Assembly (NCBI GenBank): GCA_965655095.1
Contig: OZ296648.1
Location: 104,718,001-104,782,000, forward strand
From: Haplodiscus bocki
Taxonomy: Eukaryota
Direction of reading: 5' to 3'
Length of the DNA stretch: 64,000 nucleotides
In this document: in pieces, positions 1 through 51,168 of the stretch
Layout: each line of letters begins with the position of its first letter
Position numbering within the stretch: the stretch's first letter is position 1
Program-made: the position numbers and the translations under genes
The notes under the pieces: model-generated
What the model saw: the letters and a program-made list of their open reading frames with translations, nothing else
Told to the model about the DNA's origin: nothing
The model's database searches: none

Positions 1-1899
1 TCAGGAAATGGATTCAAAAGAGGTCGCGCCACTAAAACTATGTATAGCAACTGATATACGACTTGAAACTGAGAAAAAAACAAAAGACCCATGTATTGCT
101 ACCTTTTTGACCTGGAGAAAGCGTTCGACTCGATATATCATGATCTAAAATTGTGCTGCTTGTTGCAGAGAAGTATACGGCGAAGAACAATTCCGTTCAC
201 TGAAAACCTTCTGAAAACAAAAGAAGCTACCATCAGAGTGATTGATATCCGCGAAACAACGTTCGACCCATCAATTGGCGTTCCCGGCGTGATGTTTTAT
301 CGCTTTTGTTTTTCATCCTTTTTTTGAAGGGTGCCATCGAAAAATACGAAACGAATTAACTTAAAAAAAACTGCTGATGACAATTCCAACTTCTGTAGAC
401 CCAGTGAATTACCTCAAAGTTTTGACGCTCCCTAAGAGTTTAGCAGAAAATGTAGACTTGTGAAAAAGGATCCCCAAATTGAACAGATGTTGTTTAATTT
501 ACATAATACTGCTGATCAATAGCAAACTGCTGACATTGTCAAATCTTCAACGGATTGGTTGGATCGAAACTTGAAATTGGAGAGCCGCGTTGATCAGTTG
601 AAAGCTTCAAATGTCTTCACAAGGAACACTTTCAAATGCATACTGAAACAACCAATCAATCCAAGTTCTCGATTGAAGCTATTCAAAATATGCATTCGAC
701 CAACATTAGGTTGTAGCAATGAAGTATGGTATAACAGCAAACCATCTTTTCTAATTGGTCTGTGCTAGAATGCAAAAAAAAAATAAATCTCAGAAAAATA
801 ATAGACTTTTAAAACAATTTATTTTACAACACTCGACTTTCGTTCAACACAGAGAGCATCGTTTTCGAAAACATGTCAACGTATCTGACTTCTGTAGAAT
901 GTGGTCACTCTTTGAATCCAGTATGTCTGGATAGGCGTATCAGTGGTTGCCGAAATTGTCTTCGGATTTCATATGTGAGTTATGAACAGGCAAGAATGGA
1001 TTGCATGAAAGACTTCACAAACTTTGTTCAAGCAAGAAATGAGGCAACCTCAAAACTGTCAACCAAAACTGCTCTCACTACACACGGCAAGGTAAGACAG
1101 ATTCAAAATAAGCGCTATCAGACTACTGTGGAACGAAAAATGGCAAAAAAATTGTGAATCTACTGGACAAAACAAAATCCAACAAAGAACAATCTCAATT
1201 TTTCAGACTTCTGTTAAAAAAAGGTGGTCGAAACGAATTCAAATGAAAACGTTAGAAGGCAGTATTTTTGTTATGCTGTTGTGGTAGATACGACACTCCA
1301 ACGCACACCATTTTCTTGTGCGAAGATTAGCATCGCACGCAGGCAAGATGTTGGGGAGCATAATCGATAACAGAATCAGAAAAAGGTTTCAAAAAAAGTC
1401 GCGCCACCATAACTAAGTATAGCAACTGATATACGAATTGAAACTGAGAAATAAAACAAAAGACCCATGTATTGCTACATTTCTTGACCTGGAGAAAACG
1501 TTCGACTCAAAATATCATGATCTAAGTTTGTGCTGCTTATTGGAAAGAAGTATACGGCGTAGAACGAATCCGTTGACTGAAAAGCTTCTGAAAACAAGAG
1601 AAGCTACCATCAGATTGATTGATAACCGCGAAACAACGTTCGACCTATCAATTTGCGTTCCCCGGCGTGATGTTTTATCTTTTTGTTTTTCATCCTTTTC
1701 TTGAAAAGTGTCCCTGAAAAAAATGACACAAAACAAAATAAAAAAACGCTGATGATAACACCAACTTCTGTTGCCCCAGTGAAATAAATCAAAGTCTTGG
1801 CGCTCCCTAAGAGTTTAGCAGAAAATGTAGACTTGTGAATAAAGATCCCTAAACTGAACAGATGTTGTTTAATGTACAGAATACAGCTGATCAATAGCA

Positions 1900-4800
1900 A
1901 ACTGCTGACATTGTCAAATTTTCAATGGACTGGTTGGATCGAAACTTGAAATTGAAGAGCCGCGTTGATCACTTGAAAGCTTCAAATGTCTTCACAAGGA
2001 ACTTTTTCAAATGCATACTGAAAAAACCAATCAATCCAAGTTCTCGATTGAATCTATTCAAGATATGCATTCGACCAATATTAGGTTATAGCAATGAAGT
2101 ATGGTATAACAGCAAACCATCTTTTCTAATTGGTTTGTGCTAGAATAAAAAAAATTTAAATCTCAGAAAAAGAATAGATTTTTAAAACAATTTTTTTTAC
2201 AACACTCGACTTTCGTTCAACACAGAGAGCATCGTTTTCGAAAAAATAACAACGTATCTGACTTCTGTAGACTGTGGTCACTCTTTGAATCCAGTAAGTC
2301 TGGATAGGCGTATCAGTGTTTGCCGAAATTGTCTTCGGATTTCATATGTGAGTTATGAACAGGCAAGAATGGATTGCAAGAAGGACTTCATAAACTTTGT
2401 TCAAGCAAGAACTGAGGCAATTTCAAAAATCTCAACCGAAATTTTACTCACTACACACGGCAAGGTAGGACAGATTCAAAATTAGCGCTATCAGATTAAA
2501 CTGGAATGAAAAATGGCAAAAAAAAGTCAATCTACTGGACAAAACAAAATCCAACAAAGACCAATCTCGACTTTTCAGACTTCTGTTAAAAAAACATGGT
2601 CGAAACGAATTCAAATGAAAACGTTACAAGGCAGAATTTTCTTTATGCTGTTGTGGTAAATACAACACTCCAACGCACCTCATTTTCTTCGGCGAAGTTT
2701 AGCATCGCACGCAGGCAAAATGTTGGGGATCATAAAGGATAACAGAGTCAGGAAACGGATTCAAAAGAAATCGCGCCACTAAAACTATGTATAGCAACTG
2801 ATATACGACTTGAAACTGAGAAATAAAACAAAAGACCCAGGTATTGCTACCTTTTTGACCTGGAGAAAGCGTTCGACTCGATATATCATGATCTAAAATT
2901 GTGCTGCTTATTGCAGAGAAGTATACGGCGAAGAACAATTCCGTTCACTGAAAACCTTTTGAAAGCAAAAGAAGCTAGCATCAGAGTGATTGATAACCGC
3001 GAAACAACGTTCGACCCATCAGTTGGCGTTCCCGGCGTGATGTTTTATCGCTTTTGTTTTTCATCCTTTTTTTTGAAGGGTGTCAATGAAAAATACGAAA
3101 CGAAACAAATTAAAAAAACTGCTGATGATAATTCCAACTTCTGTAGACCCAGTGAAGTAACTCAAAGTTTTGACGCTTCCTAAGAGTTTAGCAGAAAATG
3201 TAGACTTGTGAATAAGGATCCCCAATTTGAACAGATGTTGTTTAATGTACAGATTACTGCTGATCAATAGCAAACTGCTGACAATGTCAAATTTTCAATG
3301 GATTGGTTGGATCGAAACTTGAAATTGAAGAGCCGCATTGATCAGTTGAAAGATTCAAATGTCTTCACAAGGAACACTTTCAAATGCAAACTGAAACAAC
3401 CAATCAATCCAAATTCTCGATTGAAACTATTCAAGATACGTGTTCGACCAACATTAGATTTTAGCAAAAAATATGGTACAACAGCAACGAATCATTTCTA
3501 TTGGTCTGTGTTAGATTGCGAACACAACCATTATATCTTCGAAAAACAACAGATTTTAAAAAGATTTTGTATTTACAACACTCGAATTTCAATGACCACA
3601 GAGAGTATATTTCATGAAAAATTGTCAATGTATCTGACTTCTGTAGACTGTGCTCGCTCTTTGAATCTAGTAATTCTGGATAGGCTTATCAGTGTTAGCC
3701 GAAATTGTCTTCGGATTTCATATGTGAGCAATGAACAGGAAAGAATGGATTGCATGAAAGACTTCATAAACTTTGTTCAAGCAAGAAAAGAGGCAACCTC
3801 AAAACTCTCAACCAAAACTGCTCTCACTACACACGGCAATGTAAGACAGACTAAAAATAAGCGCTATCAGATTACTGTGGAATGAAAAATGGCAAAAAAA
3901 TTGCGAAACTACTGGACAAAACAAAATCCAACAAAGAACAATCTCAACTTTTCAGACTTCTGTTAAAAAAAGGTGGTCGAAACGAATTCAAATGAAAACG
4001 TTAGAAGGCAGTATTTTTGTTATGCTGTTGTGGTAGATACGACACTCCAACGCACAACATTTTCTTGTGCGAAGTTTAGCATCGCACGCAGGCAAAATGT
4101 TGGGGAGCTTAATCGATAACAGAATCAGAAAAAGGTTTCAAAAAAAGTCGCGCCACCAGAACTATGTATAGCAACTGATATACGACTTGAAACTGAGAAA
4201 TAAAACACAAGACCCATGTATTGCTACATTTCTTGACCTGGAGATAACGTTCGAGTCAAAATATCATGATCTAAGTTTGTGCTGCTTATTGGAAAGAAGT
4301 ATACGGCGTAGAACGAATCCGTTGACTGAAAACCTTCTGAAAACAAGAGAAGCTACCATCAGAGTGGTTGATAACCGCGAAACAACGTTCGACCCATCAA
4401 TTTGCGTTCCCCGGCGTGATGTTTTATCTTCTTGTTTTTCCTCCTTTTCCTGAAAGGTGTCCCTGAAAAAAAAGACACAAAACAAAGTAAGAAAACGCTG
4501 ATGATAACACCAACTTCTGTTGCCCCAGTGAATTAACTCAAAGTTTTGACGCTCCCTAAGAGTTTAGCAGAAAATGTAGACTTGTGAATAAAGATGCCTA
4601 AACTGAACAGATGTTGTTTAATGTACAGAATACAGCTGATCAATAGCAAACTGCTGACAATGTCAAATTTTCAATTGATTGGTTGGATCGAAACTTGAAA
4701 TTGAAGAGCCGCGTTGATCAGTTGAAAGCTTCAAATGTCTTCACAAGGAACACTTTCAAATGCATACTGAAACAACCAATCAATCCAAGTTCTCGATTGA

Positions 4801-7600
4801 AGCTATTCAAGATATGCATTCGACCAATATTAGGTTATAGCAATGAAGTATGGTATAACAGCAAACCATCTTTTCTAATTGGTTTGTGCTAGAATAAAAA
4901 AAAATTAAATCTCAGAAAAAGAATAGATTTTTAAAACAATTTATTTTACAACACTCGACTTTCGTTCAACACAGAGAGCATCGTTTTCGAAAAAATAACA
5001 ACGTATCTGACTTCTGTAGACTGTGGTCACTCTTTGAATCCAGTAAGTCTGGATAGGCGTATCAGTGTTTGCCGAAATTGTCTTCGGATTTCATATGTGA
5101 GTTATGAACAGGCAAGAATGGATTGCAAGAAGGACTTCATAAACTTTGTTCAAGCAAGAACTGAGGCAATTTCAAAAATCTCAACCGAAATTTTACTCAC
5201 TACACACGGCAAGGTAGGACAGATTCAAAATTAGCGCTATCAGATTAAACTGGAATGAAAAATGGCAAAAAAAAGTCAATCTACTGGACAAAACAAAATC
5301 CAACAAAGACCAATCTCGACTTTTCAGACTTCTGTTAAAAAAACATGGTCGAAACGAATTCAAATGAAAACGTTACAAGGCAGAATTTTCGTTATGCTGT
5401 TGTGGTAAATACAACACTCCAACGCACCTCATTTTCTTCGGCGAAGTTTAGCATCGCACGCAGGCAAAATGTTGGGGATCATAAAGGATAACAGAGTCAG
5501 GAAACGGATTCAAGAGAAATCGCGCCACTAAAACTATGTATAGCAACTGATATACGACTTGAAACTGAGAAATAAAACAAAAGACCCAGGTATTGCTACC
5601 TTTTTGACCTGGAGAAAGCGTTCGACTCGATATATCATGATCTAAAATTGTGATGCTTATTGCAGAGAAGTATACGGCGAAGAACAATTCCGTTCACTGA
5701 AAACCTTTTGAAAACAAAAGAAGCTAGCATCAGAGTGATTGATAACCGCGAAACAACGTTCGACCCATCAGTTGGCGTTCCCGGCGTGATGTTTTATCGC
5801 TTTTGTTTTTCATCCTTTTTTTTGAAGGGTGTCATTGAAAAATACGAAACGAAACAAATTAAAAAAACTGCTGATGATAATTCCAACTTCTGTAGACCCA
5901 GTGAAGTAACTCAAAGTTTTGACGCTTCCTAAGAGTTTAGCAGAAAATGTAGACTTGTGAATAAGGATCCCCAATTTGAACAGATGTTGTTTAATGTACA
6001 GATTACTGCTGATCAATAGCAAACTGCTGACAATGTCAAATTTTCAATGGATTGGTTGGATCGAAACTTGAAATTGAAGAGCCGCATTGATCAGTTGAAA
6101 GATTCAAATGTCTTCACAAGGAACACTTTCAAATGCAAACTGAAACAACCAATCAATCCAAATTCTCGATTGAAACTATTCAAGATACGTGTTCGACCAA
6201 CATTAGATTTTAGCAAAAAATATGGTACAACAGCAACGAATCATTTCTATTGGTCTGTGTTAGATTGCGAACACAACCATTATATCTTCGAAAAACAACA
6301 GATTTTAAAAAGATTTTGCATTTACAACACTCGAATTTCAATGACCACAGAGAGTATATTTCATGAAAAATTGTCAATGTATCTGACTTCTGTAGACTGT
6401 GCTCGCTCTTTGAATCTAGTAATTGTGGATAGGCTTATCAGTGTTAGCCGAAATTGTCTTCGGATTTCATATGTGAGCAATGAACAGGAAAGAATGGATT
6501 GCATGAAAGACTTCATAAACTTTGTTCAAGCAAGAAAAGAGGCAACCTCAAAACTCTCAACCAAAACTGCTCTCACTACACACGGCAATGTAAGACAGAC
6601 TAAAAATAAGCGCTATCAGATTACTGTGGAATGAAAAATGGCAAAAAAATTGCGAAACTACTGGACAAAACAAAATCCAACAAAGAACAATCTCAACTTT
6701 TCAGACTTCTGTTAAAAAAAGGTGGTCGAAACGAATTCAAATGAAAACGTTAGAAGGCAGTATTTTTGTTATGCTGTTGTGGCAGATACGACACTCCAAC
6801 GCACAACATTTTCTTGTGCGAAGTTTAGCATCGCACGCAGGCAAAATGTTGGGGAGCTTAATCGATAACAGAATCAGAAAAAGGTTTCAAAAAAAGTCGC
6901 GCCACCAGAACTATGTATAGCAACTGATATACGACTTGAAACTGAGAAATAAAACACAAGACCCATGTATTGCTACATTTCTTGACCTGGAGATAACGTT
7001 CGAGTCAAAATATCATGATCTAAGTTTGTGCTGCTTATTGGAAAGAAGTATACGGCGTAGAACAAATCCGTTGACTGAAAACCTTCTGAAAACAAGAGAA
7101 GCTACCATCAGAGTGGTTGATAACCGCGAAACAACGTTCGACCCATCAATTTGCGTTCCCCGGCGTGATGTTTTATCTTCTTGTTTTTCCTCCTTTTCCT
7201 GAAAGGTGTCCCTGAAAAAAAAGACACAAAACAAAGTAAGAAAACGCTGATGATAACACCAACTTCTGTTGCCCCAGTGAATTAACTCAAAGTTTTGACG
7301 CTCCCTAAGAGTTTAGCAGAAAATGTAGACTTGTGAATAAAGATGCCTAAACTGAACAGATGTTGTTTAATGTACAGAATACAGCTGATCAATAGCAAAC
7401 TGCTGACAATGTCAAATTTTCAATTGATTGGTTGGATCGAAACTTGAAATTGAAGAGCCGCGTTGATCAGTTGAAAGCTTCAAATGTCTTCACAAGGAAC
7501 ACTTTCAAATGCATACTGAAACAACCAATCAATCCAAGTTCTCGATTGAAGCAATTCAAGATATGCATTCGGCCAATATTAGGTTATAGCAATGAAGTAT
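1900..7600 (+). repeat. Higher-order block A: dimer, period 2,749 bp
   Basis: Identical or near-identical ORFs lie at exact 2,749-bp offsets (2285/5034, 3298/6047, 4187/6936, 2699/5448), while adjacent monomers differ visibly. Confidence 0.9.
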
Positions 7601-8049
7601 GGTAAAACAGCAAACCATCTTTTCTAATTGGTCTGTGCTAGAATGCAAAAAAAATTAAATCTCACAAAAATATTAGATTTTCAAAACAATTTATTTTACA
7701 ATACTCGACTTTCGTTCAAGACAGAGAGCATCGTTTTCGAAAACATGTCAACGTATCTGACTTCTGTAGACTGTGGTCACTCTTTGAATCTAGTAACTCT
7801 GGATAGGCGTACCAGTGTTTGCCGAAATTGTCTTCGGATTTCATATGTGAGTTGTGAACAGGCAAAAATGGATTGCAAGAAAGACTTCATAAACTTTGTT
7901 CAAGCAAGAACTGAGGCAATTTCAAAAATCTCAACCGAAATTACTCTCACTACACACGGCAATGTGAGACAGATTCAAAATTAGCGCTATAAGATTAAGC
8001 TGGAATGAAAAATGGCAAAAAAATATGTGAATCTACTGGACAAAACAAA

Positions 8050-11000
8050 ATCCAACAAAGACTAATCTCGACTTTTCAGACTTCTGTTAAAAAAACATGG
8101 TCGGAATGAATTCAAATGAAAACGTTAGAAGGCAGAATTTTCGTTATGCCGTTGTGGTAAATACGACACTCCAACGCGCTTCATTTTCTTCCGCGAAGTT
8201 TAGCATCGCACGCAGGCAAAATGTTGGGGATCATAAAGGATAACAGAGTCAGGAAACGGATTCAAAAGAAATCGCGCCACTAAAACTATGTATAGCAACT
8301 GATATACGACTTGAAACTGAGAAAAAAAACAAAAGACCCATGTATTGCTACATTTCTTGACCTGGAGAAAACGTTCGACTCGATATATCATGATCTAAAA
8401 TTGTGCTGCTTATTGCAGAGAAGTATACGGCGAAGAACAATTCCGTTCACTGAAAACCTTCTGAAAACAAAAGAAGCTACCATCAGAGTGACTGATATCC
8501 TCGAAACAACGTTCGACCCATCAATTGGCGTTCCCGACGTGATGTTTTATCGCTTTTGTTTTTCATCCTTTTTTTGAAGGGTGCCATTGAAAAATACGAA
8601 ACGAAACAAATTAAAAAAAACTGCTGATGATAATTCCAACTTCTGTAGACCCAGTGAATTAACTCAAAGTTTTGACGCTCCCTAAGAGTTTAGAAGAAAA
8701 TGTAGACTTGTGAAGAAAGATCCCCAAATTGAACAGATGTTGTTTAATGTACAGAATACAGCTGATCAATAGCAAACGCTGACATTGTCAAACTTTCATT
8801 GGATTGATTGGATCGAAACTTGAAACTGAAGAACCGCGTTGACCAGTTGAAAGCTCCAAATGTCTTCACGAGGAGCACTTTCAAATGCATACTGAAACAA
8901 CCAATCAATCCAAGTTCTCAATTGAAACTATTCAAGATACGTATTCGACCAACATTAGATTTTAGTAAAAAAATATGGTACAACAGCAACGAATCATTTC
9001 AATTGATCTGTGTTAGATTGCGAACACAACCATTATATCTTCGAAAAACAACAGATTTTAAAAACATTTTGTATTTACAACACTCGAATTTCAATGACCA
9101 CAGAGAGTGTATTTTATGAAAAAATGTCAACGTATCTGACTTCTGTAGACTGTGCTCGCTCTTTGAATCTAGTAATTCTGGATAGGCGTATCAGTGTTTG
9201 CAAAAATTGTCTTCGGATTTCATATGTGAATTGTGAACAGGCAAGAATGGATTGCATTAAAGACTTCATAAACTTTGTTCAAGCAAGAAATGAGGCAACC
9301 TCAAAACTCTCAACCAAAATTGCTCTCACTGTACACGGCAATGTAAGACAGATTCAAAATAAGCGCTATCAGATTACTGTGGAATGAAAAATGGCAAAAA
9401 AATTGTGAATCTACTGGACAAAACAAAGTACAACAACGAACAATCTCGACTTTTCAGACTTCTGTTTAAAAATGCGGTCGAAACGAATTCAATTGAAAAC
9501 GTTAGAAGGCAGTATTTTTGTTAGGCTGTTGTGGTAAATACGACACTCCAACGCACTTCATTTTCTTCTGCGAAGTTTGGCATCGCACGCAGGCAAAATT
9601 TTGGGGAGCATAATCGATAACGGAATCAGAAAAAGGTTTCAAAAGAAGTCGCGCCACCAGAACTATGAATAGCAACTGATATACGACTTGAAACTGAGAA
9701 ATAAAACAAAAGACCCATGTATTGCTACCTTTTGGACCTGGAGAAAACGTTCGACTCAAAAAATGATGATCTAAAATTGTACTGCTTATTGCAGAGAAGT
9801 ATACGCCAAAGAACAATTCCGTTCACTGAAAACCTTCTGAAGACAAAAGAAGCTACCATCAGAGTGATTGATATCCGCGAAACAACGTTCGACCCATCAA
9901 TTGGCGTTCCGCGGGTTGATCTTTTATCTCTTTTGTTTTTCATGCAATTTTTTGAAGGGTGTCATTGAAAAATACGAAACGAAACAAATTAAAACAAAAC
10001 GTTGATGATAACACCAACTTCTGTTGCCCCAGTGAATTAACTCAAAGTTTTGACGCTCTCTAAGAGTTTAGCAGAAAATGAAGACTTGTGAAAAAAGTCC
10101 TCTAAACTGAACCGTTGTTGTTTAATGTACAGAATACAGCTGGTCAATAGCAAACTGCGGACACTGTCAAGTTTTCAGCGGATTGGTTGGATCGAAACTT
10201 GAAATTGAAGGGCCGCGTTGATCAGTTGAAAGCTTCAAATGTCTTCACAAGGAACACTTTCAAAAGCATACTGAAACAGCCAATCAATCCAAGTTCTCGA
10301 TTGAAGCCATTCAAGATATGCATTCGAGCAACTTTAGGTTATAGCAATGAAGTATGGTATAACAGCAAACCATCTATTCTAGTTGGTCTGTGTTAGAATG
10401 CAAAAAAATTAAATCTCAGAAAAATAATAGATTTTTAAAACAATTTGTTTTACAACACGCGACTTTCGTCCAACACAGAGAGCATCGTTTTCGAAAACAT
10501 GTCAACGTATCTGACTTCTGTAGACTGTGGTCGCTCTTTGAATCCAGTAAGTCTGGATAGGCGTATCATTGTTTACCGAAATCTTCACCGGATTTCATAT
10601 GTGAGTTATGAACAGGCAAGAATGGATTGCATGAAAGACTTCATAAACTTTGTTCAAGCAAAAACTGAGGCAATTTCAAAAATCTCCACTAAAATTACTC
10701 TCACTACACACGGCAATGTAAGACAGATTCAAAATAAGCGCTATCAGATTACTGTGGAATGAAAGATGGCAAAAAAATTGTGAATCTACTAGACAAAACA
10801 AAATCTAACAAAGAACAATCTCGACTTTTCAGACTTCTGTTAAAAAAATGTGGTCGAAACGAATTCAAATGAAAACGTTAGAAGGCAGAATTTTCGTTAT
10901 GCCGTTGTGGTAAATACGACACTCCAACGCACTTCATTTTCTTCCGCGAAGTTTAGCATCGCACGCAGGCAAAATGTTGGGGATCATAAAGGATAACAGA

Positions 11001-24900: not shown

Positions 24901-27300
24901 GAGAAAACGTTCGACTCCATATATCATGATCTAAAATTGTGCTGCTTATTGGAAAAAAGTATACGTCGTAGAGCAAATCCGTTGACTGAAAACTTTTTGA
25001 TAACAAAAAAAGCTACCATCAGAGTGATTGATATCCGGTAAAAAACGTTCGACCCATCAATTGGCGTTCCCCGTTGTGATATTATATCTCTTTTGTGGAG
25101 ATGCTTCATCCTTCTTCTGAAGGGTGTCCTTGAAAAATACAAAAGGAAACAAAGTAAAAGAAACGCTGATGATAAAACCAACTTCTGTTGCCCCAGTGAT
25201 TTAACTCAAAGCTTTGACGCTCCTTAAGAGTTTAGCAGAAAATGTAGACTTGTGAATAAAGATCCCTAAATGAACAGGTGTTGTTTAAACTACAAAATAC
25301 AACAGTTGATCAATAGCAAACTGCTGACATTGTCGAACTTTCAGTAGAATGGTTGGATGGAAACTTGAAACTGAAGAGCCGCGTTGATTAGTTGCAAGCT
25401 CCCAATATCTTCACAAGGAACACTTTTGAATGCATACTGAAACAAGCAATCCATCCAAGTTCTCGATTGAGACTATTCAAGATATGTATTCGACCAATAT
25501 TAGATTATAGTAAAAAAGTATGGTATAACAGCAACCCATCTATTCTAATTGGTCTGTGTTAGAATGCAAAAAAACTTTAAATCTTACAAAAGAAATAGAT
25601 TTTTGAAACAATTTTTTTTACAACACTCGACTTTCGTTCACCATAGAGAATTTGTTTTTCGAAAACATGTCAACGTATCTGACTTCTGTACACTGTGCTC
25701 GTTCTTTGAATCTAGTAACTTGGGATAGGCGTATCAGTGTTTGCCGAAATCATCTCCCGATTTCATTTGTGATTTATCATTAGGCAAGGATGGATTGCAT
25801 GAAGGACTTCATCAACTTTGTTCAAGCAAGAACTGAGACAACCTCATAACTCTCAACCGAAATTACTCCCACTATACATGGCAAAGTGACACAGATTCAA
25901 AATAAGCGCTATCAGATTACTGTGGAACGAAAATGGCAGAAAAATGTGAATCCACTGGACAAAACAAAGTCCAACAAAAACGAATCTCGACTTCTTAGAA
26001 TTCTGGTATAAAAACGTGGTCGGAACGAATTCAAATGAAAACCTAAGAAGGCAGAATTTTCGTTATGCTGTTGTGGTAAATACGACACTCCAACGCACTT
26101 CATTTTGTTCGGCGACGTTTAGCATCGCACGCAGGCAAAATGTTGCGGAGCATAATGGATAACAGAATCAGAAAATGGATTCAAAAATCGTCGCGCCACT
26201 AGAATTATGTATAGCAACTGATATACGACTTGAAACTGAGAAATAAAACAAAAGACCCTTGTATTGCTACCTTTCTGACCTGGAGAAAGCGTTCGACTCG
26301 GAATAACATGATCTAAATTTGTGCTGCTTATTGCAGAGAAGTATACGGCGAAGAACAGTTCCGTTGACTGAAAACCTTCTGGAAACAAGAGAAGCTACCA
26401 TCACATCGATTGATAACCGGGAAACAACGTTCGAAACATCATTTGGCGTTACCCGGCGTGATGTTTTATCTCTTTTGTTTTCCATCCTCTTTCTGAAGGG
26501 TGTCATTGAAAAATACGAAACGAAACAAATTTAAAAAAAAACGCTGATGACAATTCCAACCTCTGTAGCCCCAGTGATATAAATCAAAGTTCTGACGCTC
26601 CTTTAGAGTTTAGAGGAAAATGTACTTGTTAGTAAGTATCCCCAAATTGAACAGATGATGTTTAAAGTACAGAATACAGCTGATCAATAGCAAACTGCTG
26701 ACATTGTCAAACTTTCAATGGATTGGTTGGATCGAAACTTGAAACTGAAGAGCAGCGTTTATCAGTTGAAAACTCCAAATTCTTCACAATGAACACTTTT
26801 AAACGCATAGTGAAACAACTGATCAATCCGAGGTCTTGATTGAAACTATTCAAGATACGTATTCGAGCAACATTAGATTTTATGATTAAAAGAATGGTAC
26901 AACAGCAACCCATCTATTCTAATTGGTCTGTGTTAGAATGCAAAAATATCTTCTAAAAACAATAGGTTTTAAAAACGTTTTAGTTTTTACAACACTCGGC
27001 TTTCGTTCACCACAGAGAGTTTGTTTTTCGAAAACATGTCAACGTATCTGGCTTCTGTAGACTGTGCTCATTCTTTGAATCCAGTAAACTTGGATAGGCG
27101 TATCAGTTTTTGTCGAAATCGTCTTTGGATTTCATTAATGATTTATCAACAAGCAAGGAAGGATTGCATGAAAGACTTCATAAATTTTGTTCAATCAAGA
27201 ACTGAGGCAACCTCAAAACTCTCAACCGAAATCACTCTCGCTATACACGGCAATGTAAGACAGATTCAAAATAAGCGCTATCAGATTACTGTGGAATGAA
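19000..27300 (+). repeat. Higher-order block C: trimer, period ~4,136-4,140 bp, 2 copies
   Basis: ORF pairs 19325/23465, 19827/23965, 21983/26119, 22183/26319 and 22885/27021. Private variants such as ctcttttgtggagatgcttcatcc occur only at ~20,950 and ~25,090. Confidence 0.92.
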
Positions 27301-30300
27301 AAATGGCAAAAAAATTGTGAATCTACTGGACAAAACAAAATCTAACAAAGAAAAATCTCGACTTTTCAGACTTCTGTTAAAAAAATGTGGTCGAAACGAA
27401 TTCAAATGAAAACGTTAGAAGGCAGACTTTTCGTTATGCTGTTGTGGTAACTACGACACACCAACGCACTTCATTTTCTTCGGCGAAGTTTAGCATCGCA
27501 CGCAGGCAAATTGTTCGGGAGCATAATGGATAACAGAATCAGAAGATGGATTCAAAAAAAGTCGCGCCACTAGAACTATGTATAGCAACTGATATACGAC
27601 TTGAAACTGACAAAGAAAACAAAAGACCCATGTACTGCTACCTTTTTGACCTGAAGGAAGCGTTCGACTCGACACATCATGATCTAAGTTTGTGCTGCTT
27701 TTTTGCAGAGAAGTATACGTCAAAGAACAATTCCGTTGATTGAAAACCTTCTGAAAACCAAAGAAGCTACCATTAGAGTGATTGATATCCGCGAAACAAC
27801 GTTCTACCCATCAATTGGCGTTCCCCGGGTTGATGTTTTATCTCTTTTGTTTTTCATCCAAATTTTTTGAAGGGTGTCATTGAAAAATACGAAACGAAAC
27901 AATTTAAAAAGAAACGCTGATGATAAAACAAACCTCTGTAGCCCCAGTGAAATAACTCAAAGTTTTGACGCTCCCTAATAGCTTAGCAGAAAATGTAGAC
28001 TTGTGGTTAAGGATCCCCAAACTAAACAGACGTTGTTTAATGTACTGAATACAGCTGATCAAAAGGAAACTGCTGACATTGTCAAGTTTTCAATGGACTG
28101 GTTGGAACGAAACTTGAAACTGAAGAACCCCGTTGATCAGTTGAAAACTCCAAATGTCTTCACAAGGAACACTTTTAAATGCATACTGAAACAACCAATC
28201 AATCCAAATTCTCGATTGAAACTATTCAAGTTACGTATTCGACCAACATTGGATTTTAGTGATAAAGTATGGTACAACAGCAACCCATCATTTTTAATTG
28301 GTCTGTGTTAGAATGCAAAAACAACCATCATATCTTCGAAAAACATCAGTTTTTATAAACTTTTTAATCTTACAACACTCGACTTTTGTTCACCATAGAG
28401 AGTGTATTTTTTGAAAACATGTCAACGTATCTGACTTCTGTAGACTGTGCCCGTTCTTTGAATCTAGTAAATCTGGATAGGCGTATCAATGTTTACCGAA
28501 ATCTTCAACGGATTTCATATGTGAGTTATGAACAGGCAAGAATGGATTGCATGAAAGACTTCATAAACTTTGTTCAAGCAAGAACTGAGGCAACCTCAAA
28601 AATCTCAACCGAAATTACTCTCACCACACACGGCAATGTGAGACAGATTCAAAATTAGCGCTATCAGATTAAGCTGGAATGAAGAATGGCAAAAAATTGT
28701 GAATCTACTGGACAAAACAAAATCTAACAAAGAAAAATCTCGACTTTTCAGACTTCTGTTAAAAAAATGTGGTCGAAACGAATTCAAATGAAAACGTTAG
28801 AAGGCAGACTTTTCGTTATGCTGTTGTGGTAAATGCGACACACCAACGCACTTCATTTTCTTCGGCGAAGTTTAGCATTGCACGCAGGCAAATTGTTCGG
28901 GAGCATAATGGATAACAGAATCAGAAGATGGATTCAAAAAAAGTCGCGCCACTAGAACTATGTATAGGAACTGATATACGACTTGAAACTGACAAAGAAA
29001 ACAAAAGACCCATGTATTGCTACCTTTTTGACCTGAAGAAAGCGTTCGACTCGACACATCATGATCTAATTTTGTGCTGCTTTTTTGCAGAGAAGTATAC
29101 GTCAAAGAACAATTCCGTTGACTGAAAACCTTCTGAAAACCAAAGAAGCTACCATTAGAGTGATTGATATCCGCGAAACAACGTTCTACCCATCAATTGG
29201 CGTTCCCCGGGTTGATGTTTTATCTCTTTTGTTTTTCATCCAATTTTTTGAAGGGTGTCATTGAAAAATACGAAACGAAACAATTTAAAAAGAAACGCTG
29301 ATGATAAAACAAACCTCTGTAGCCCCAGTGAAATAACTCAAAGTTTTGACGCTCCCTAATAGCTTAGCAGAAAATGTAGACTTGTGGTTAAGGATCCCCA
29401 AACTAAACAGACGTTGTTTAATGTACTGAATACAGCTGATCAAAAGGAAACTGCTGACATTGTCAAGTTTTCAGTGGACTGGTTGGAACGAAACTTGAAA
29501 CTGAAGAACCCCGTTGATCAGTTGAAAACTCCAAATGTCTTCACAAGGAACACTTTTAAATGCATACTGAAACAACCAATCAATCCAAATTCTCGATTGA
29601 AACTATTCAAGATACGTATTCGACCAACATTGGATTTTAGTGATAAAGTATGGTACAACAGCAACCCATCATTTTTAATTGGTCTGTGTTAGAATGCAAA
29701 AACAACCATCATATCTTCGAAAAACATCAGGTTTTATAAACTTTTTAATCTTACAACACTCGACTTTTGTTCACCATAGAGAGTGTATTTTTTGAAAACA
29801 TGTCAACGTATCTGACTTCTGTAGACTGTGCCCGTTCTTTGAATCTAGTAAATCTGGATAGGCGTATCATTGTTTACCGAAATCTTCACCGGATTTCATA
29901 TGTGAGTTATGAACAGGCAAGAATGGATTGCATGAAAGACTTCATAAACTTTGTTCAAGCAAGAACTGAGACAACCTCAAAAATCTCAACCGAAATTACT
30001 CTCACCACACACGGCAATGTGAGACAGATTCAAAATTAGCGCTATCAGATTAAGCTGGAATGAAAAATGGCAAAAAATTGTGAATCTACTGGACAAAACA
30101 AAATCTAACAAAGAAAAATCTCGACTTTTCAGACTTCTGTTAAAAAAATGTGGTCGAAACGAATTCAAATGAAAACGTTAGAAGGCAGACTTTTCGTTAT
30201 GCTGTTGTGGTAAATACGACACACCAACGCACTTCATTTTCTTCGGCGAAGTTTAGCATCGCACGCAGGCAAATTGTTCGGGAGCATAATGGATAACAGA

Positions 30301-32700
30301 ATCAGAAGATGGATTCAAAAAAAGTCGCGCCACTAGAACTATGTATAGCAACTGATATACGACTTGAAACTGACAAAGAAAACAAAAGACCCATGTATTG
30401 CTGCGTTTTTGACCTGAAGAAAGCGTTCGACTCGACACATCATGATCTAAGTTTGTGCTGCTTTTTTGCAGAGAAGTATACGTCAAAGAACAATTCCGTT
30501 GACTGAAAACCTTCTGAAAACCAAAGAAGCTACCATTAGAGTGATTGATATCCGCGAAACAAAGTTCTACCCATCAATTGGCGTTCCCCGGGTTGATGTT
30601 TTATCTCTTTTGTTTTTCATCCAATTTTTTGAAGGGTGTCATTGAAAAATACGAAACGAAACAATTTAAAAAGAAACGCTGATGATAAAACAAACCTCTG
30701 TAGCCCCAGTGAAATAACTCAAAGTTTTGACGCTCCCTAATAGCTTAGCAGAAAATGTAGACTTGTGGTTAAGGATCCCCAAACTAAACAGACGTTGTTT
30801 AATGTACTGAATACAGCTGATCAAAAGGAAACTGCTGACATTGTCAAGTTTTCAGTGGACTGGTTGGAACGAAACTTGAAACTGAAGAACCCCGTTGATC
30901 AGTTGAAAACTCCAAATGTCTTCACAAGGAACACTTTTAAATGCATACTGAAACAACCAATCAATCCAAATTCTCGATTGAAACTATTCAAGATACGTAT
31001 TCGACCAACATTGGATTTTAGTGATAAAGTATGGTACAACAGCAACCCATCATTTTTAATTGGTCTGTGTTAGAATGCAAAAACAACCATCATATCTTCG
31101 AAAAACATCAGTTTTTATAAACTTTTTAATCTTACAACACTCGACTTTTGTTCACCATAGAGAGTGTCTTTTTTGAAAACATGTCAACGTATCTGACTTC
31201 TGTAGACTGTGCCCGTTCTTTGAATCTAGTAAATCTGGATAGGCGTATCATTGTTTACCGAAATCTTCACCGGATTTCATATGTGAGTTATGAACAGGCA
31301 AGAATGGATTGCATGAAAGACTTCATAAACTTTGTTCCAGCAAGAACTGAGGCAACCTCAAAAATCTCAACCGAAATTACTCTCACCACACACGGCAATG
31401 TGAGACAGATTCAAAATTAGCGCTATCAGATTAAGCTGGAATGAAAAATGGCAAAAAATTGTGAATCTGCTGGACAAAACAAAATCTAACAAAGAAAAAT
31501 CTCGACTTTTCAGACTTCTGTTAAAAAAATGTGGTCGAAACGAATTCAAATGAAAACGTTAGAAGGCAGACTTTTCGTTATGCTGTTGTGGTAAATACGA
31601 CACACCAACGCACTTCATTTTCTTCGGCGAAGTTTAGCATCGCACGCAGGCAAATTGTTCGGGAGCATAATGGATAACAGAATCAGAAGATGGATTCAAA
31701 AAAAGTCGCGCCACTAGAACTATGTATAGCAACTGATATACGACTTGAAACTGACAAAGAAAACAAAAGACCCATGTATTGCTACCTTTTTGACCTGAAG
31801 AAAGCGTTCGACTCGACACATCATGATCTAATTTTGTGCTGCTTTTTTGCAGAGAAGTATACGTCAAAGAACAATTCCGTTGACTGAAAACCTTCTGAAA
31901 ACCAAAGAAGCTACCATTAGAGTGATTGATATCCGCGAAACAACGTTCTACCCATCAATTGGCGTTCCCCGGGTTGATGTTTTATCTCTTTTGTTTTTCA
32001 TCCAATTTTTTGAAGGGTGTCATTGAAAAATACGAAACGAAACAATTTAAAAAGAAACGCTGATGATAAAACAAACCTCTGTAGCCCCAGTGAAATACCT
32101 CAAGTTTTGACGCTCCCTAATACCTTAGCAGAAAATGTAGACTTGTGGTTAAGGATCCCCAAACTAAACAGACGTTGTTTAATGTACTGAATACAGCTGA
32201 TCAAAAGGAAACTGCTGACATTGTCAAGTTTTCAATGGACTGGTTGGAACGAAACTTGAAACTGAAGAACCCCGTTGATCAGTTGAAAACTCCAAATGTC
32301 TTCACAAGGAACACTTTTAAATGCATACTGAAACAACCAATCAATCCAAATTCTCGATTGAAACTATTCAAGTTACGTATTGGACCAACATTGGATTTTA
32401 GTGATAAAGTATGGTACAACAGCAACCCATCATTTTTAATTGGTCTGTGTTAGAATGCAAAAACAACCATCATATCTTCGAAAAACATCAGTTTTTATAA
32501 ATTTTTTAATCTTACAACACTCGACTTTTGTTCACCATAGACAGTGTATTTTTTGAAAACATGTCAACGTATCTGACTTCTGTAGACTGTGCCCGTTCTT
32601 TGAATCTAGTAAATCTGGATAGGCGTATCATTGTTTACCGAAATCTTCACCGGATTTCATATGTGAGTTATGAACAGGCAAGAATGGATTGCATGAAAGA
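27300..32700 (+). repeat. Block D: four near-identical monomers, period 1,380-1,381 bp
   Basis: ORFs at 28003/29384/30765/32145 and 28386/29767/31148/32528 have almost identical translations. Confidence 0.93.
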
Positions 32701-34638
32701 CTTCATAAACTTTGTTCAAGCAAAAACTGAGGCAACCTCAAAAATCTCAACCAAAATTACTCTCACTACACCCGGGAATGTGAGACAGATTCAAAATAAG
32801 CACTATCAGATTACTGTGGAATAAAAAAAGGGATAAAACTGTGAATCTACTGGACAAAACAAAATCCAACAAAGAACAATCTCGACTTTTCAGATTTCTG
32901 TTGAAAAAAAGTGGTCGAAACGAATTCAAATGAAAACGTTAGAAGGCAGAATTTTGTTATGCTGTTGTGGTAAGTACGATACTCCAACGCACTTCATTTT
33001 CTTCGGCGAAGTTTATCATCGCTCGCAGGCAAAATGTTGGGGAGGATATTGGATAACAGAATCAAAAAACGGTTTCAAAAAAAGTCGCGCCACTACAACT
33101 ATGTATAGCAACTGATATACGACTTGAAACTGAGAAACAAAACAAAAGACCCATGTATTGCTACTTTTTTCACCTGGAGAAAGCGTTCGACTCAATATAT
33201 CATGACCTAACTTTGTGCTGCTCATTGGAGAGAAGTATACGGCGTAGAACAATTCCATAGTCTGAAAACCTTCTGAAATCAAGAGAAGCTATCATCAGGG
33301 CGATTGATAATCGGGAAACAACGTTCGACACATCAATTGGCGTTCCCCGGCGTGATGTTTTATCTCTTTTGTTTTTCATCTTTTTTCTGAAGGGTGTCAT
33401 TGAAAAATACGAAACGAAACAAATGAAAAAAACAAACGATGATGATAATACCAACCTCTGTAGCCCCAGTGAAATAACCCAAAAATTTGACGCTCCATAA
33501 GAATTTAGCGGAAAAAGTAGACTTGTGAACAAGGATCCCCGAACTGAACAGATGTTGTTTAATGTACAGAATACAGCTAATCATTAGCAAACTGCTGACA
33601 TTGTCAAAGTTTCAGTGGATTGGTTGGATCGAAACTTGAAATTGAAGAGCCGCGTTGATTAGTTGAAACCTGCAAAAATCTTCACAAGGAACACTTTTAA
33701 ATGCATGCTGGAACAAGCAATCAATCCAACTTCTCGATTCAAACCATTTAAGACATGTATTCGACCTTTACTAGATTATAGTAAGAAAGTATGGTACAAC
33801 AGCAACCCATCATTTCTAGTTCCTCTGTGTTGGAATGCAAAAAAAAATATTATATCTTCCAAGAACAAAAGTTTTTATAAAGATTTTACTTTTACAACAC
33901 TCGACTTTCGTTCACCACACAGTGTATCTCCTTCGAAAACATATCAATGTATCTGACTTCTATAGACTGTGGTCGCTCTTTGAATCCAGTAAGTCTGGAT
34001 AGGCGTATCAGTGTTTGCTGAATTTGTCTTCGGAATTCATATGTGAGTTATGAACAGGCAAGAATAGATTGCATGAAAGACTTAATAAACTTTGTTCAAG
34101 CAAGAAATGAGACAATCTCAAAACTCTCAACCAAAATTGCTCTCACTATACACGGCAATGTAAGACAGATTCAAAATAAGCGCTATCAGATTACTGTGGA
34201 ATAAAAAAAGGGAAAAAATTGTGAATCTACTGGACAAACCAAAATCCAACAAAGACCAATCTCGACTTTCCAGATTTCTGTTAAGAAACGTGGTCGAAAA
34301 GAATTCAAACGAAACCGTTAGAAGGCAGAACTTTCGCTGTGCTGTTGTGGTGATTACAACACTCCATCATACTTCTTTTCTTCGGCAAAGTTAACGAAGA
34401 ATAGTTTTACTGACAAATTGAATCAAGAAAACATCGACAGATCATTGATTGCGTTGTAAAAATGCATAATTGATAGAGATATATTGGAACTAATTTTGTT
34501 TTCGAAACAGAAATCAGCATTACTGTTTCTTCTGATAGCTGAAGCACTTATATTGTCTAATAGAAACTATTAGGTTTTAGTCAAATGGAAATAAATTTGA
34601 GCAACCATGACAATAAAAGCTCTTTCTCCCCACCCCAT

Positions 34639-34646
34639 TCTCTCTT

Positions 34647-34719
<73 letters not shown>
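34639..34719. repeat. (CT)n/(GA)n microsatellite, ~80 bp
   Basis: Visible tctctctc run with a few interruptions; it produces the spurious ERER/SLSL ORFs. Confidence 0.97.
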
Positions 34720-35000: not shown

Positions 35001-35249
35001 AGCAATTTCCATCAGAACACAAAAGAAAGTTCTCAAAAACGTTCGCAAATAAAAATGCCTTAAAAGTTCGAGCAAAAGCATAGACACAAAATTTGATATT
35101 GAGTATTTTAAAAATGACTTTCTTCCAAATACTTGTATCTCGTGAAAGTACATTTTTTTCTTATTCCGAAAAAATAAAGAGTTGATGATGTTTTTGTCTG
35201 GGACATTTACGCTATCATCTAAAAAACATCTTCGAAATCGGAGCATGGA

Positions 35250-39099: not shown

Positions 39100-39540
39100 T
39101 CAAAGAAAGACAATCTTGTTTGAGCAGAAGGTGCGGATTCCGAGCATCATAACGATGATAGGCCTTGTTTGTTTCATGTAAATTCCTTCCAATCTCAAGA
39201 GGATCGAAATATCAGATTTTGAATCGAAGACTGAAGCATTTTCCTCTGTGAGTTTATGCTCAAAAAGTCGAAAATTACAGTTGTCAGGCGTTTTACTGAT
39301 CCCTTGATCTTTCAAGGCGCGTTGATAGGTGTCCAATACTTTGTTGGAAGAAGGTACTAGCACATGCTGGACACATTAGGGCATAAACGACTCAACTTCT
39401 AGGAAAAGTAGGGTTCATGGTCTTGAGATAGTAAAGTTTGTTTCTAGTTTTTGGGGGAGAGGAATAAAATGCAGAGCCTTGTAGTTGCTTGTCCTTTTTT
39501 CTATGAAATCTTGCTCAACATTCTTCCTGTTTTCGACAAA
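39100..39540 (-). pseudogene. Penelope-like element GIY-YIG endonuclease remnant (3' part of the split PLE ORF)
   Basis: Minus strand: FVENRKNV...QKLET.. KLYYLKTMNPTFPRS*VVYALMCPACASTFFQQSIGHLSTRLE, then KTP..LTEENASVFDS..LLRLEGIYMKQTRPII. This matches the PLE VVY-x3-C-x2-C-x3-YVGQT-x-R-x-L-x2-R and LE-x3-I-x4-P-x-(L/I)N pattern. Confidence 0.8.
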
Positions 39541-46796: not shown

Positions 46797-46819
46797 GAAC
46801 CCGAAAATCCAATTTGAAA

Positions 46820-47105
46820 ATCACTTTTTGAATCTCAAAAATGGAAACACGTCTGAAGTTAGTATAAAAGTTTCACAACGTGTGACTTTTTGCATCAAAA
46901 CTTCACAACGTATACGATTTTGTTTTAGGAAATTTACAACTCGCCAGACTTTGAATTCACTTTTTTACGACGCTTTAAAGTTTGAAGTGAAAACTTTACA
47001 ACGAATCAGCTTTCGTTTAATTTTTTCAAGACGTGTCATACTTTGAAAGAAAAATTTCACAAGGCCTCAGATTTTGAAAAAAACTTTTGAAACTTGTCAG
47101 CGTTC
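46820..47105 (-). repeat. Mirror copy of the ~31-bp minisatellite in the right arm
   Basis: Units acaacgtgtgactttttg, acaacgtatacgattttg, acaactcgccagactttg, acaacgaatcagctttcg and acaaggcctcagattttg are reverse complements of the 41.8-42.06 kb units. Confidence 0.75.
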
Positions 47106-51000: not shown

Positions 51001-51168
51001 AAACTTCGTAAACCAACCAGAATCAAGTTTTACGTCATCCGAGACCTCTCAGTTACGCTTGAATACACGTTTCGAATGTCGGTTCTACTCAACTTTTGCC
51101 TATCGTACTACGTAATATTGTTCAACCGCCCCCCCCCCACCGTCAGCTCTGCTCACTCTTCCGCAGCT

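What the first reader, a model, noticed from the sequence alone, without database searches (positions are those of the whole stretch)
1..34392. A >34-kb macrosatellite whose monomer is essentially one whole dead LINE reverse-transcriptase domain
Seen: about 25 direct tandem copies of ~1.38 kb with no ORF1, no endonuclease, no poly(A) tails and no spacer or TSD between copies. Each carries RT motifs from the domain-0 region through the ADD motif to the C-terminal HxNP-like motif (~460 codons). Known: TE-derived satellites exist but are usually short pieces of LTRs, UTRs or MITEs. Inference: one already decaying 5'-truncated LINE or RT fragment was amplified at the DNA level (unequal exchange or rolling circle) rather than by repeated retrotransposition. 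It may now act as structural satellite (centromeric or pericentromeric) or as a small-RNA source.
Basis: partly seen in the sequence, partly recalled or inferred. Interest (0 to 1): 0.8.

Follow-up and report, generated by a model that had tools for sequence, protein, structure and literature searches.

The report
Satellite grown inside one dead LINE
A 1.38-kb inner piece of one long-dead jumping gene (a CR1/L2-type LINE) was copied head-to-tail 41 times in place, making a 57-kb repeat array that still sits between that element's own front part and tail; this is a very clean but ordinary example of a satellite born from a transposon.

Summary
Window 1-34392 holds 24 full and 2 partial head-to-tail units of 1372-1386 bp (85-100% identical), with no poly(A), spacer or TSD between them. 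The window shows only the last 24.9 units. The array is exactly 41 units (56,731 bp, C1:104,695,662-104,752,392), and three shorter interrupted blocks lie upstream.

Each unit matches aa 534-1016 of an intact 1050-aa LINE ORF2 from the same genome. It runs from the middle of RT motif 1, through motifs A, B and a decayed xADD box, to the C-terminal Cys-His motif. Domain 0 is not included.

The array is colinear at both edges with a single LINE copy. The element's endonuclease-to-RT-start segment lies directly 5', and its last 24 codons, 3'UTR and (CT)n tail lie directly 3'. The unit junction is a 4-bp microhomology (AGTT) found only at this locus.

Higher-order repeats, a divergent edge unit and shared frame-breaking lesions point to DNA-level in-situ amplification of an already defective element. 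I found no evidence of function: it is a single locus with no conserved box, no Rfam hit and no RNA run on record.

LINE-ORF2-derived satellites are already known. I verified two further independent LINE-derived arrays in this genome (C2, C11), and the scan has noted more on other DNA.

The parts
1..34392 (+). Last 24.9 units (u17 partial to u41) of a 41-unit, 56,731-bp tandem array of a 1.38-kb LINE-internal segment. The array begins outside the window at C1:104,695,662.
   Evidence: periodicity, copies, identities; upstream continuation, 41 units.
28869..30249 (+). One unit in native register (u38, 1381 bp). It starts 'SLA.HAGK..G.I.DNRI' (second half of RT motif 1) and carries motifs A, B, a decayed xADD box, the thumb region and the C-terminal Cys-His motif. 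It corresponds to aa 534-1016 of an intact 1050-aa ORF2.
28869..28872 (+). Example of the unit-to-unit junction: AGTT, a 4-bp microhomology shared by the 3' breakpoint (..GGCAAAGTT|aacg) and the 5' breakpoint (..gcatc|AGTTTAGC). No poly(A), spacer or TSD.
   Evidence: all junctions and both array edges aligned; junction found only at this locus, 40 of 40 scored matches.
1324..16454 (+). Domain of dimeric higher-order repeats (u18-u28). Best matches lie at lag 2, up to 99.9% identical, while adjacent units are only 87-89% identical.
19211..27486 (+). Two copies of a trimeric higher-order repeat (u31-33 = u34-36, 98.3-99.6% identical; adjacent units 86-87%).
27487..33009 (+). Young monomeric run (u37-u40; adjacent units 97-99% identical).
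33010..34392 (+). Terminal unit u41, the most divergent of all (best match 87.7%). This is the edge effect expected under unequal exchange.
34393..34619 (+). Unamplified 3' remainder of the same LINE copy: the last 24 codons of ORF2 after the Cys-His motif, then a short 3'UTR ending '..CCATGACAATAAAAG'. Colinear with dispersed family copies across the array edge.
   Evidence: single HSPs spanning the edge; alignment with L007, L008, L012.
34620..34719 (+). (CT)n tail of the LINE. The same tail follows the same last bases in three dispersed copies.

Best explanation
One old, already defective copy of a CR1/L2-lineage non-LTR retrotransposon sits at C1:~104.68-104.75 Mb. Its family has an ORF1 with a PHD finger, an ORF2 with APE endonuclease, RT and a C-terminal Cys-His motif, and a (CT)n tail.

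A 1.38-kb internal segment of this copy, from the middle of RT motif 1 to the last Cys of the C-terminal motif, was first duplicated in tandem by an illegitimate, microhomology-mediated (AGTT) DNA event. Candidates are a replication template switch or end joining between sister chromatids. This step is inferred.

The dimer was then expanded and continually reshuffled by unequal exchange. That produced 41 units with dimeric, trimeric and monomeric higher-order domains and divergent edge units. The pattern is shown; the process is inferred.

A later illegitimate join (register position 753 to the element's 5' region) created larger 4-6-kb repeats upstream that also contain the endonuclease part.

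The array is most likely non-functional DNA: a single-locus macrosatellite caught with its source element still attached on both sides.
For: Embedding in one LINE copy:
- Single BLAST HSPs from dispersed LINE copies run colinearly across both array edges: 2407 bp across the 5' edge and 1107-1212 bp across the 3' edge.
- The 5' flank reads '..YRSI' in frame with the unit's 'SLAS.AGK', so motif 1 is split by the breakpoint.
- The 5' segment X carries EN aa 139-324 and RT aa 498-574 of the ruler ORF2.
- The 3' flank plus the (CT)n tail align with three dispersed copies.

Array anatomy:
- The array is exactly 41.0 units. It starts at register position 867 and ends at 870.
- The junction has 4 bp of microhomology and no tail or TSD. 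It exists only at this locus.
- Units lack the element's 3'UTR and tail, so they cannot be separate retrotranspositions.
- Nearest relatives lie at lags of 1, 2 or 3 units with up to 99.9% identity, against 85-89% between subfamilies. Edge unit u41 is the most divergent.

Decay:
- At least 4 frame-breaking lesions are shared by at least 90% of units and at least 1 by all 41. The longest open stretch is 204 of ~460 codons.

Secondary and independent support:
- The secondary junction 753|X is repeated three times upstream.
- Short-read contigs from two samples bridge the 3' edge, one with 0 differences.
- Family assignment: Exo_endo_phos_2, RVT_1 and PHD hits on a dispersed copy. The same architecture occurs in an intact relative. 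ORF1 with PHD plus CCHC is reported only in the CR1 and L2 lineages (PMC4120745).
Against: - The first duplication cannot be told apart from an RT template jump at insertion, or from rolling-circle/eccDNA amplification followed by homologous re-integration. All three give the same final anatomy.
- Shared lesions could have been spread by homogenisation instead of being inherited from the founder.
- The unit count rests on one assembly. The public runs are held only as short-read contigs, which confirm the edge and the multi-copy state but not 41 units.
- Lack of function is argued from absence of evidence. No chromatin, FISH or small-RNA data exist here.
- Clade assignment rests on domain architecture and tail type, not on an RT phylogeny with reference elements.
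Confidence: 0.85

Rival explanations
1. The first tandem duplication was made by the LINE's own reverse transcriptase. During target-primed reverse transcription the enzyme jumped from RT motif 1 back to the Cys-His region of the same or a second template, so the copy was born with an internal duplication. Only the later expansion was DNA-level.
For: The 4-bp microhomology at the junction fits template jumping as well as DNA repair. Several LINE-derived arrays occur in this genome (scan notes).
Against: At least 1-4 frame-breaking lesions are shared by nearly all units, suggesting the segment was already dead when it was multiplied. The three verified arrays have different breakpoints in EN/RT coordinates. 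The same locus shows a second illegitimate junction (753|X) that joins the 3' part of a unit to the element's 5' region, which is not what a jump during reverse transcription would give. Unchecked scan notes list many non-LINE macrosatellites in this genome.
Confidence: 0.1
2. Rolling-circle origin. The 1.38-kb segment was excised as a circle closed at the AGTT microhomology, replicated as a concatemer and re-integrated by homologous recombination into its source copy.
For: Such a re-integration would give whole units in register with the source copy on both sides and a microhomology junction, as seen here.
Against: Nothing requires it. The nested higher-order repeats, the divergent edge unit and a graded age structure (0.1% to 15% divergence) are the expected products of stepwise unequal exchange. 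A single burst would give a star-like set of units.
Confidence: 0.12
3. The array is a functional satellite: a centromere or pericentromere component, or a small-RNA (piRNA-like) source against this LINE family.
For: It lies near the middle of a 198-Mb scaffold (104.7 Mb), in an ORF-poor, TE-rich stretch. All units have the same orientation.
Against: It is at a single locus and no other chromosome carries it. It is only 57 kb in a 1.5-Gb genome. The longest invariant run among non-redundant units is 9 columns, against ~10 in shuffles, so there is no conserved box. There is no Rfam family and no RNA run on record. The units are only 66-76% identical to the surviving dispersed copies, which is poor for small-RNA targeting.
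Confidence: 0.08
4. Assembly artefact: a few units were over-expanded by the assembler.
For: Some dimers are 99.9% identical. The copy number has no long-read confirmation available here.
Against: Units form structured subfamilies that differ by up to 15%, with distinct indels (1371-1414 bp). An artefact would not create this. Summed word depth is roughly 5-20 times higher in array bins than in flank bins in two samples, which is qualitative only and by the tool's own caveat not a copy number. Contigs bridge the 3' edge exactly.
Confidence: 0.03

Closest known systems
LINE-ORF2-derived satellites: PROsat (Phodopus roborovskii, L1 ORF2), Pvc20 (harbour seal, L1 ORF2), chicken HinfI/SCR1 (CR1 3'UTR plus part of ORF2), as tabulated in review PMC9659126
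   Same: The monomer derives from LINE coding sequence and was amplified as DNA, not by retrotransposition. The chicken case also involves the CR1 group.
   Different: Here the array is at a single locus and still embedded in register in its source copy, with both breakpoints readable. The unit is a long continuous block (46% of ORF2, about 460 codons). I did not examine the listed satellites' sequences, so the comparison rests on the review's table.
Two-stage model of satellite birth from TEs: tandemization of a TE subsegment, then expansion (review PMC12628747)
   Same: Exactly this sequence of events is inferred: a founding microhomology duplication followed by unequal-exchange expansion with higher-order repeats.
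   Different: That review lists UTRs of LINEs and gag/pol of LTR elements as sources. An RT-to-C-terminus block of a LINE is a less commonly listed source.
Tandem TE dimers by double insertion, later expanded (McGurk and Barbash 2018, Genome Research; cited from my own knowledge, not read here)
   Same: A TE provides the seed of a satellite, which is then expanded by unequal exchange.
   Different: In that model the junction joins a TE's end to a TE's start around a target site. Here both breakpoints are internal, and the units lack the element's 3' end and tail. The defining feature is not met.
Tandem arrays of site-specific or telomeric LINEs (R1/R2 in rDNA, HeT-A/TART; from my own knowledge)
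   Same: Head-to-tail LINE sequence in one orientation.
   Different: Those arrays grow by successive retrotranspositions, so each unit has its own 3' end. Here no unit has one.
Sibling arrays in the same genome: C2:56,310,546-56,332,001 (2,073-bp unit, at least 10 units) and C11:~51.365-51.376 Mb (1,983-bp unit, 5.6 units)
   Same: These are also kb-sized, degraded LINE-internal segments in tandem. The C2 array is preceded by its element's ORF1 PHD region in the same orientation.
   Different: They come from different LINE families (30-42% aa identity to our RT piece). Different segments are amplified: EN aa ~100 to RT aa ~775 in C2, and a block containing RT aa ~491-775 in C11. So there is no common breakpoint.

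Membership tests
Non-LTR retrotransposon (LINE), CR1/L2 lineage | Reverse transcriptase of the RVT_1 type with LINE motifs | tested here: met
   Window piece 11064-11438: RVT_1 E 8e-6, 26.1 bits, below Pfam's 29.6 cut-off. Dispersed family copy L028:2755-3000: 40.5 bits, above cut-off. Units align to an intact ORF2 across aa 534-841 with motifs A, B and a decayed C.
Non-LTR retrotransposon (LINE), CR1/L2 lineage | APE-type endonuclease N-terminal to the RT in the same element | tested here: met
   Exo_endo_phos_2 on the dispersed copy. EN aa 139-324 of the ruler found in the X segment directly 5' of the array. It is absent from the units themselves.
Non-LTR retrotransposon (LINE), CR1/L2 lineage | C-terminal C-x1-3-C-x7-8-H-x4-C motif in ORF2 | tested here: met
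   Present in dispersed copies and in the ruler at aa 1000-1016. Its remnant is at the 3' end of 32 of 41 units.
Non-LTR retrotransposon (LINE), CR1/L2 lineage | ORF1 with a PHD finger (reported in the CR1 and L2 lineages, not Jockey; PMC4120745) | tested here: met
   PHD hit upstream of EN in dispersed copy L028 (E 4e-4, below Pfam's cut-off), supported by a tblastn match to the ruler's ORF1. The ruler's ORF1 has PHD plus zf-CCHC. The host copy itself keeps at most the end of ORF1.
Non-LTR retrotransposon (LINE), CR1/L2 lineage | Microsatellite-type 3' tail rather than poly(A) | tested here: met
   A (CT)n tract follows the same terminal bases in the host copy and three dispersed copies.
Non-LTR retrotransposon (LINE), CR1/L2 lineage | Placement inside the CR1 or L2 clade in an RT phylogeny with reference elements | not tested
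   No reference LINE set (Repbase/Dfam) is available in these tools. Database hits carried no clade names.
Satellite / macrosatellite DNA | Head-to-tail units of at least 1 kb forming an array of tens of kb | tested here: met
   41 units of 1371-1414 bp, 56,731 bp.
Satellite / macrosatellite DNA | Local homogenisation or higher-order repeat structure | tested here: met
   Best matches at lags 1-3 with up to 99.9% identity, against 85-89% between subfamilies.
Centromeric satellite | Presence at the centromeres of several chromosomes, or binding of centromeric histone | tested here: not met
   High-identity copies and the junction occur only at one locus on C1. Histone binding is not testable with these tools.
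TE tandems made by double insertion or successive retrotransposition | Each unit carries the element's own 3' end or tail, with target-site sequence at junctions | tested here: not met
   Units stop 227 bp short of the element's end and lack the (CT)n tail. The junction is AGTT microhomology only.

The most novel reading that the evidence does not exclude
The array is one instance of an unusually active, sequence-agnostic process in this 1.5-Gb genome. That process would turn kb-sized segments of dead mobile elements into 10-60-kb arrays in situ. LINE cases are shown here three times. According to about 98 unchecked scan notes, the sources also include Polinton/virus genes, a provirus-host junction and non-coding DNA. 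If so, the genome would be a natural series of satellites caught at birth, with source copies and breakpoints intact. From such a series the founding mechanism (replication template switch, or circle re-integration) and the rate of array growth could be read directly.
Probability: 0.4. Interest if true: 0.55.

Novelty: new member of a known kind. Interest (0 to 1): 0.33.

Why it matters
The origin of a satellite can rarely be reconstructed, because the source and the founding junction have usually been lost. Here both breakpoints, the 4-bp microhomology, the unamplified flanks of the source LINE, a second-order junction and a graded series of higher-order repeats are all readable in one locus. 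It is a textbook-quality specimen of the two-stage model: an illegitimate duplication followed by unequal exchange. On its own it adds an example, not a principle. Its wider value depends on whether the many similar arrays noted in this genome prove real and share a mechanism.

Tried and rejected
- TRF found nothing because its period limit is 500, so I used k-mer offsets and BLAST instead.
- Most stop-free pieces of the units have no Pfam hit.
- tblastn of intact ORF2s against single units is weak because of frameshifts. It was rescued with looser settings.
- My first regular expression for a YxDD box found none. The alignment shows it decayed to TADD/NADD.
- Search for a conserved box in the unit: none beyond chance.
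- Rfam over the whole window: no family.
- Sequencing runs: only four DNA-type runs from one study, held as contigs, and no RNA. So there is no read-level copy number and no expression test.
- Repeated retrotransposition, double insertion and a mobile tandem variant are rejected.
- (CT)n as an insertion target rather than a tail: no (CT)n tract was found in the 30 kb scanned from C1:104,668,001, which covers the host copy's 5' side, or anywhere in the 10-kb locus holding the full dispersed copy. I therefore treat it as the tail.
- The database search with the intact relative's RT half gave about 1000 relatives but no clade names.
A Peptidase_C5 family search of the genome found no array. That lead remains untested.
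- The flanks of the C11 array gave no LINE match, so its embedding is unknown.
- The C2 array runs into an assembly gap (N), which I left alone.
Lesion counts were made on alignment columns only.
- The organism was not identified. An earlier agent's 'probable coral' was not tested.
Full report
**Observation**

A k-mer offset spectrum of the window peaks sharply at about 1.38 kb and at two and three times that value from position 1 to about 33,000. It vanishes after about 34,400. TRF reported nothing only because its longest period is 500.

BLAST of one unit against the window finds 24 complete and 2 partial copies. All are on the + strand, they abut each other, and the last ends at 34392. Pairwise identities run from 85 to 100%, mean 89.5%. 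The base composition is uniform and A-rich on the + strand across the array, and it changes at about 34 kb. The described object is therefore real and far beyond chance.

**True extent**

The window is G000:C1:104,718,001-104,782,000 in a 1.5-Gb assembly. I fetched the 50 kb upstream. The array continues without interruption to C1:104,695,662.

Re-cut in its native register, it is exactly 41 units and 56,731 bp. The eight 5'-most units are 1409-1414 bp and the rest are 1370-1385 bp.

Further upstream, at C1:104,682,877-104,695,661, lie three shorter blocks. In each, one to three units end at register position 753 and are followed by a 1.6-kb segment I call X.

**What the unit is**

Dispersed copies on many chromosomes match the unit at 66-74% identity, but in the permuted order [867-1381][6-859] of my first register. 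This gave the native order.

One dispersed copy (L028) carries the following, in order: an ORF1 remnant with a PHD finger, an APE-type endonuclease (Exo_endo_phos_2), RVT_1 (40.5 bits), and a 3' end at '..CCATGACAATAAAAG' followed by (CT)n.

An intact, more distant relative in the same genome served as a ruler. Its ORF1 (L038:6753-7916, minus strand) has PHD plus a zinc knuckle. Its ORF2 (L038:3567-6719, minus strand) is 1050 aa, with EN at aa 10-203, RVT_1 at 516-763, 'YRPITL' at 530, FADD at 686 and the Cys-His motif at 1000-1016.

In these coordinates the unit begins at aa 534, immediately after 'YRPI' of motif 1. It contains motif A (DLEKAFDS), motif B (GVP..VLS), a decayed catalytic box (TADD/NADD) and the thumb region. 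It ends at the last Cys of the C-x1-C-x7-H-x4-C motif. It therefore covers about 46% of ORF2. It does not include domain 0, the endonuclease, the last ~24-34 codons, the 3'UTR or the tail.

An ORF1 with PHD plus CCHC is reported only in the CR1 and L2 lineages (PMC4120745). Together with the microsatellite-type tail, this places the family there. I could not run a reference RT phylogeny.

**The array sits inside one LINE copy**

- *5' edge.* The flank reads '...YRSI' in frame with the unit's 'SLAS.AGKMLG.IIDNRI'. A single 2.4-kb HSP from a dispersed copy runs colinearly from X across the edge into the first unit. X carries EN aa 139-324 and RT aa 498-574 of the ruler.
- *3' edge.* Single HSPs of 1.1-1.2 kb from three dispersed copies run from the last unit across position 34392 to about 34,620. 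The alignment shows the same terminal bases and the same (CT)n tail at 34,620-34,719.
- *Whole locus.* It is one roughly 3.4-kb, 5'-truncated LINE copy in which an internal 1.38-kb block has been multiplied, inflating it to about 73 kb.

**Junctions**

All unit junctions read '...TTCTTCGGCGA-AGTT-TAGCATCGC...'. The unamplified 5' breakpoint is 'gcatc|AGTTTAGC' and the unamplified 3' breakpoint is 'GGCAAAGTT|aacg'. The join therefore lies within 4 bp of microhomology, AGTT. By the usual (k+1)(1/4)^k(3/4)^2 expectation, 4 or more bp occur by chance in roughly 1-2% of random joins; this is my own calculation.

There is no poly(A), no (CT)n, no spacer and no TSD at any junction. A 90-bp probe across the junction finds 40 scored matches in the genome, all at this locus. 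The tandem form is therefore not a mobile variant.

A second, different junction (register position 753 joined to the element's 5' region) is shared by the three upstream blocks. This shows a later illegitimate duplication whose 4-6-kb unit includes X.

**Dynamics**

Each unit's closest relative lies 1, 2 or 3 units away, at up to 99.9% identity, while neighbouring units in the dimeric and trimeric domains are only 86-89% identical. The 3' terminal unit is the most divergent of all, with a best match of 87.7%. This is the classical signature of expansion and turnover by unequal exchange, with edges that take little part.

The deepest unit-to-unit divergence is about 15%. That is similar to the mutual divergence of the three dispersed copies I compared (12-15%). 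Units and those copies differ by 24-29%. The array is therefore old but still turning over, and the host copy belongs to a subfamily with no closer survivor among the matches scored (best match outside this locus 74%).

CpG observed/expected is 1.0 in the array and 0.84 in the rest of the window, so there is no sign of methylation-driven decay.

**State of the coding sequence**

No unit keeps more than 204 stop-free codons; the median is 109. A minimum-lesion path over alignment columns needs at least 4 stops or frameshifts shared by at least 90% of units and at least 1 shared by all 41.

**Independent support and function**

Four public runs from one study hold the stretch, all as short-read contigs, and none is RNA. 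Contigs from two samples bridge the 3' edge: 34183-34562 with 0 differences, and 34086-34469 with 11. Summed word depth is several-fold higher over the array than over the flank, which is qualitative only.

I found no evidence of function:
- single locus;
- no conserved box, with a longest invariant run of 9 columns against about 10 in shuffles;
- no Rfam family;
- an ORF-poor, TE-rich neighbourhood.

The mid-scaffold position (104.7 of 197.9 Mb) is compatible with a centromere-near location but proves nothing.

**Recurrence in this genome**

Searching the genome with an RT piece revealed other regularly spaced matches. I verified two of them.

- *C2:56,310,546-56,332,001.* It has at least 10 units of 2,073 bp spanning EN aa ~100 to RT aa ~775. 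An ORF1-PHD match precedes it in the same orientation. It is cut off by an assembly gap, which I left alone.
- *C11, about 51.365-51.376 Mb.* It has 5.6 units of 1,983 bp containing RT aa ~491-775.

Both come from different LINE families (30-42% aa identity to our RT piece) and have different breakpoints. There is thus no LINE-specific hotspot.

The scan's earlier notes list further LINE-RT arrays on other DNA of this genome. One was followed up with the same conclusion as mine. About 98 'macrosatellite' notes have monomers from Polinton or virus genes, a provirus-host junction and non-coding DNA. I could not test these.

**Comparison with the known**

Satellites made by tandemizing TE subsegments are a recognised class with a two-stage model (PMC12628747). 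LINE-ORF2-derived satellites are on record: PROsat, Pvc20 and chicken HinfI/SCR1 from CR1 (table in PMC9659126).

The present case fails the defining feature of double-insertion or successive-retrotransposition tandems, because its units lack their own 3' ends. It also fails that of a centromeric satellite, because it is not multi-locus. It is best filed as a single-locus macrosatellite born inside a CR1/L2-type LINE copy: a new member of a known kind.

**Verdict**

- Observation: confirmed.
- Core interpretation (DNA-level amplification of a dead LINE piece): supported, and refined to an internal segment of a still-flanking copy.
- Functional speculation: unsupported.
- Interest: modest for the single locus. 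It would be higher only if the genome-wide abundance of such arrays proves real.

Noticed in passing
G000:C2:56,310,546-56,332,001 (L029-L032): An independent tandem array of at least 10 units of 2,073 bp (94-100% identical). It derives from a different LINE family and spans endonuclease aa ~100 to RT aa ~775. An ORF1-PHD match precedes it on the same strand, and a 200-N assembly gap cuts off its 3' side.
   Followed up: partly
G000:C11:~51,364,600-51,375,800 (L033-L035, minus strand): An independent tandem array of 5.6 units of 1,983 bp (94-100% identical), each holding RT aa ~491-775 of a third LINE family. No LINE match was found in its flanks.
   Followed up: partly
G000:C6:92,246,001-92,266,000 (L036-L037): Complex nested direct repeats with offsets of about 5.3, 5.08, 3.7 and 3.3 kb around two RT matches 5.3 kb apart. 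Structure not resolved.
   Followed up: no
G000:C1:104,682,877-104,695,661 (L014-L015), upstream of the window: Three second-order repeats of 4-6 kb. Each consists of the LINE's 1.6-kb EN-to-RT-start segment (X copies 96-97% identical to one another) plus 1-3 array units ending at register position 753. All share the same illegitimate junction.
   Followed up: yes
G000:C1:104,679,659-104,681,526 (L014:1659-3526): A 1.87-kb stretch interrupts the 5' part of the host LINE copy. It is absent from the duplicated X copies, so it is either a later insertion or was deleted in them. Identity unknown.
   Followed up: no
L038:3567-7916 (G000:C2:71,385,567-71,389,916, minus strand): An apparently intact LINE of the same architecture: ORF1 of 387 aa with PHD and a zinc knuckle, and ORF2 of 1050 aa with EN, RT and the Cys-His motif. 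It was used here only as a coordinate ruler. Its RT is 24-36% identical to the array units over the local matches.
   Followed up: partly
window 35,247-35,280: Many short-read contigs (9-14 per run, in both samples) end or diverge at these two places. This suggests the boundary of another dispersed repeat just downstream of the LINE tail.
   Followed up: no
window 1-34,392 versus 34,720-64,000: CpG observed/expected is 1.01 in the array and 0.84 in the rest of the window. The array shows no CpG depletion despite its age.
   Followed up: no
window 39,100-52,480: Another first-reader note describes a Penelope-like ORF split by a foldback element here. I did not examine it. Only three ORFs of at least 140 aa exist in 34.7-64 kb.
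   Followed up: no
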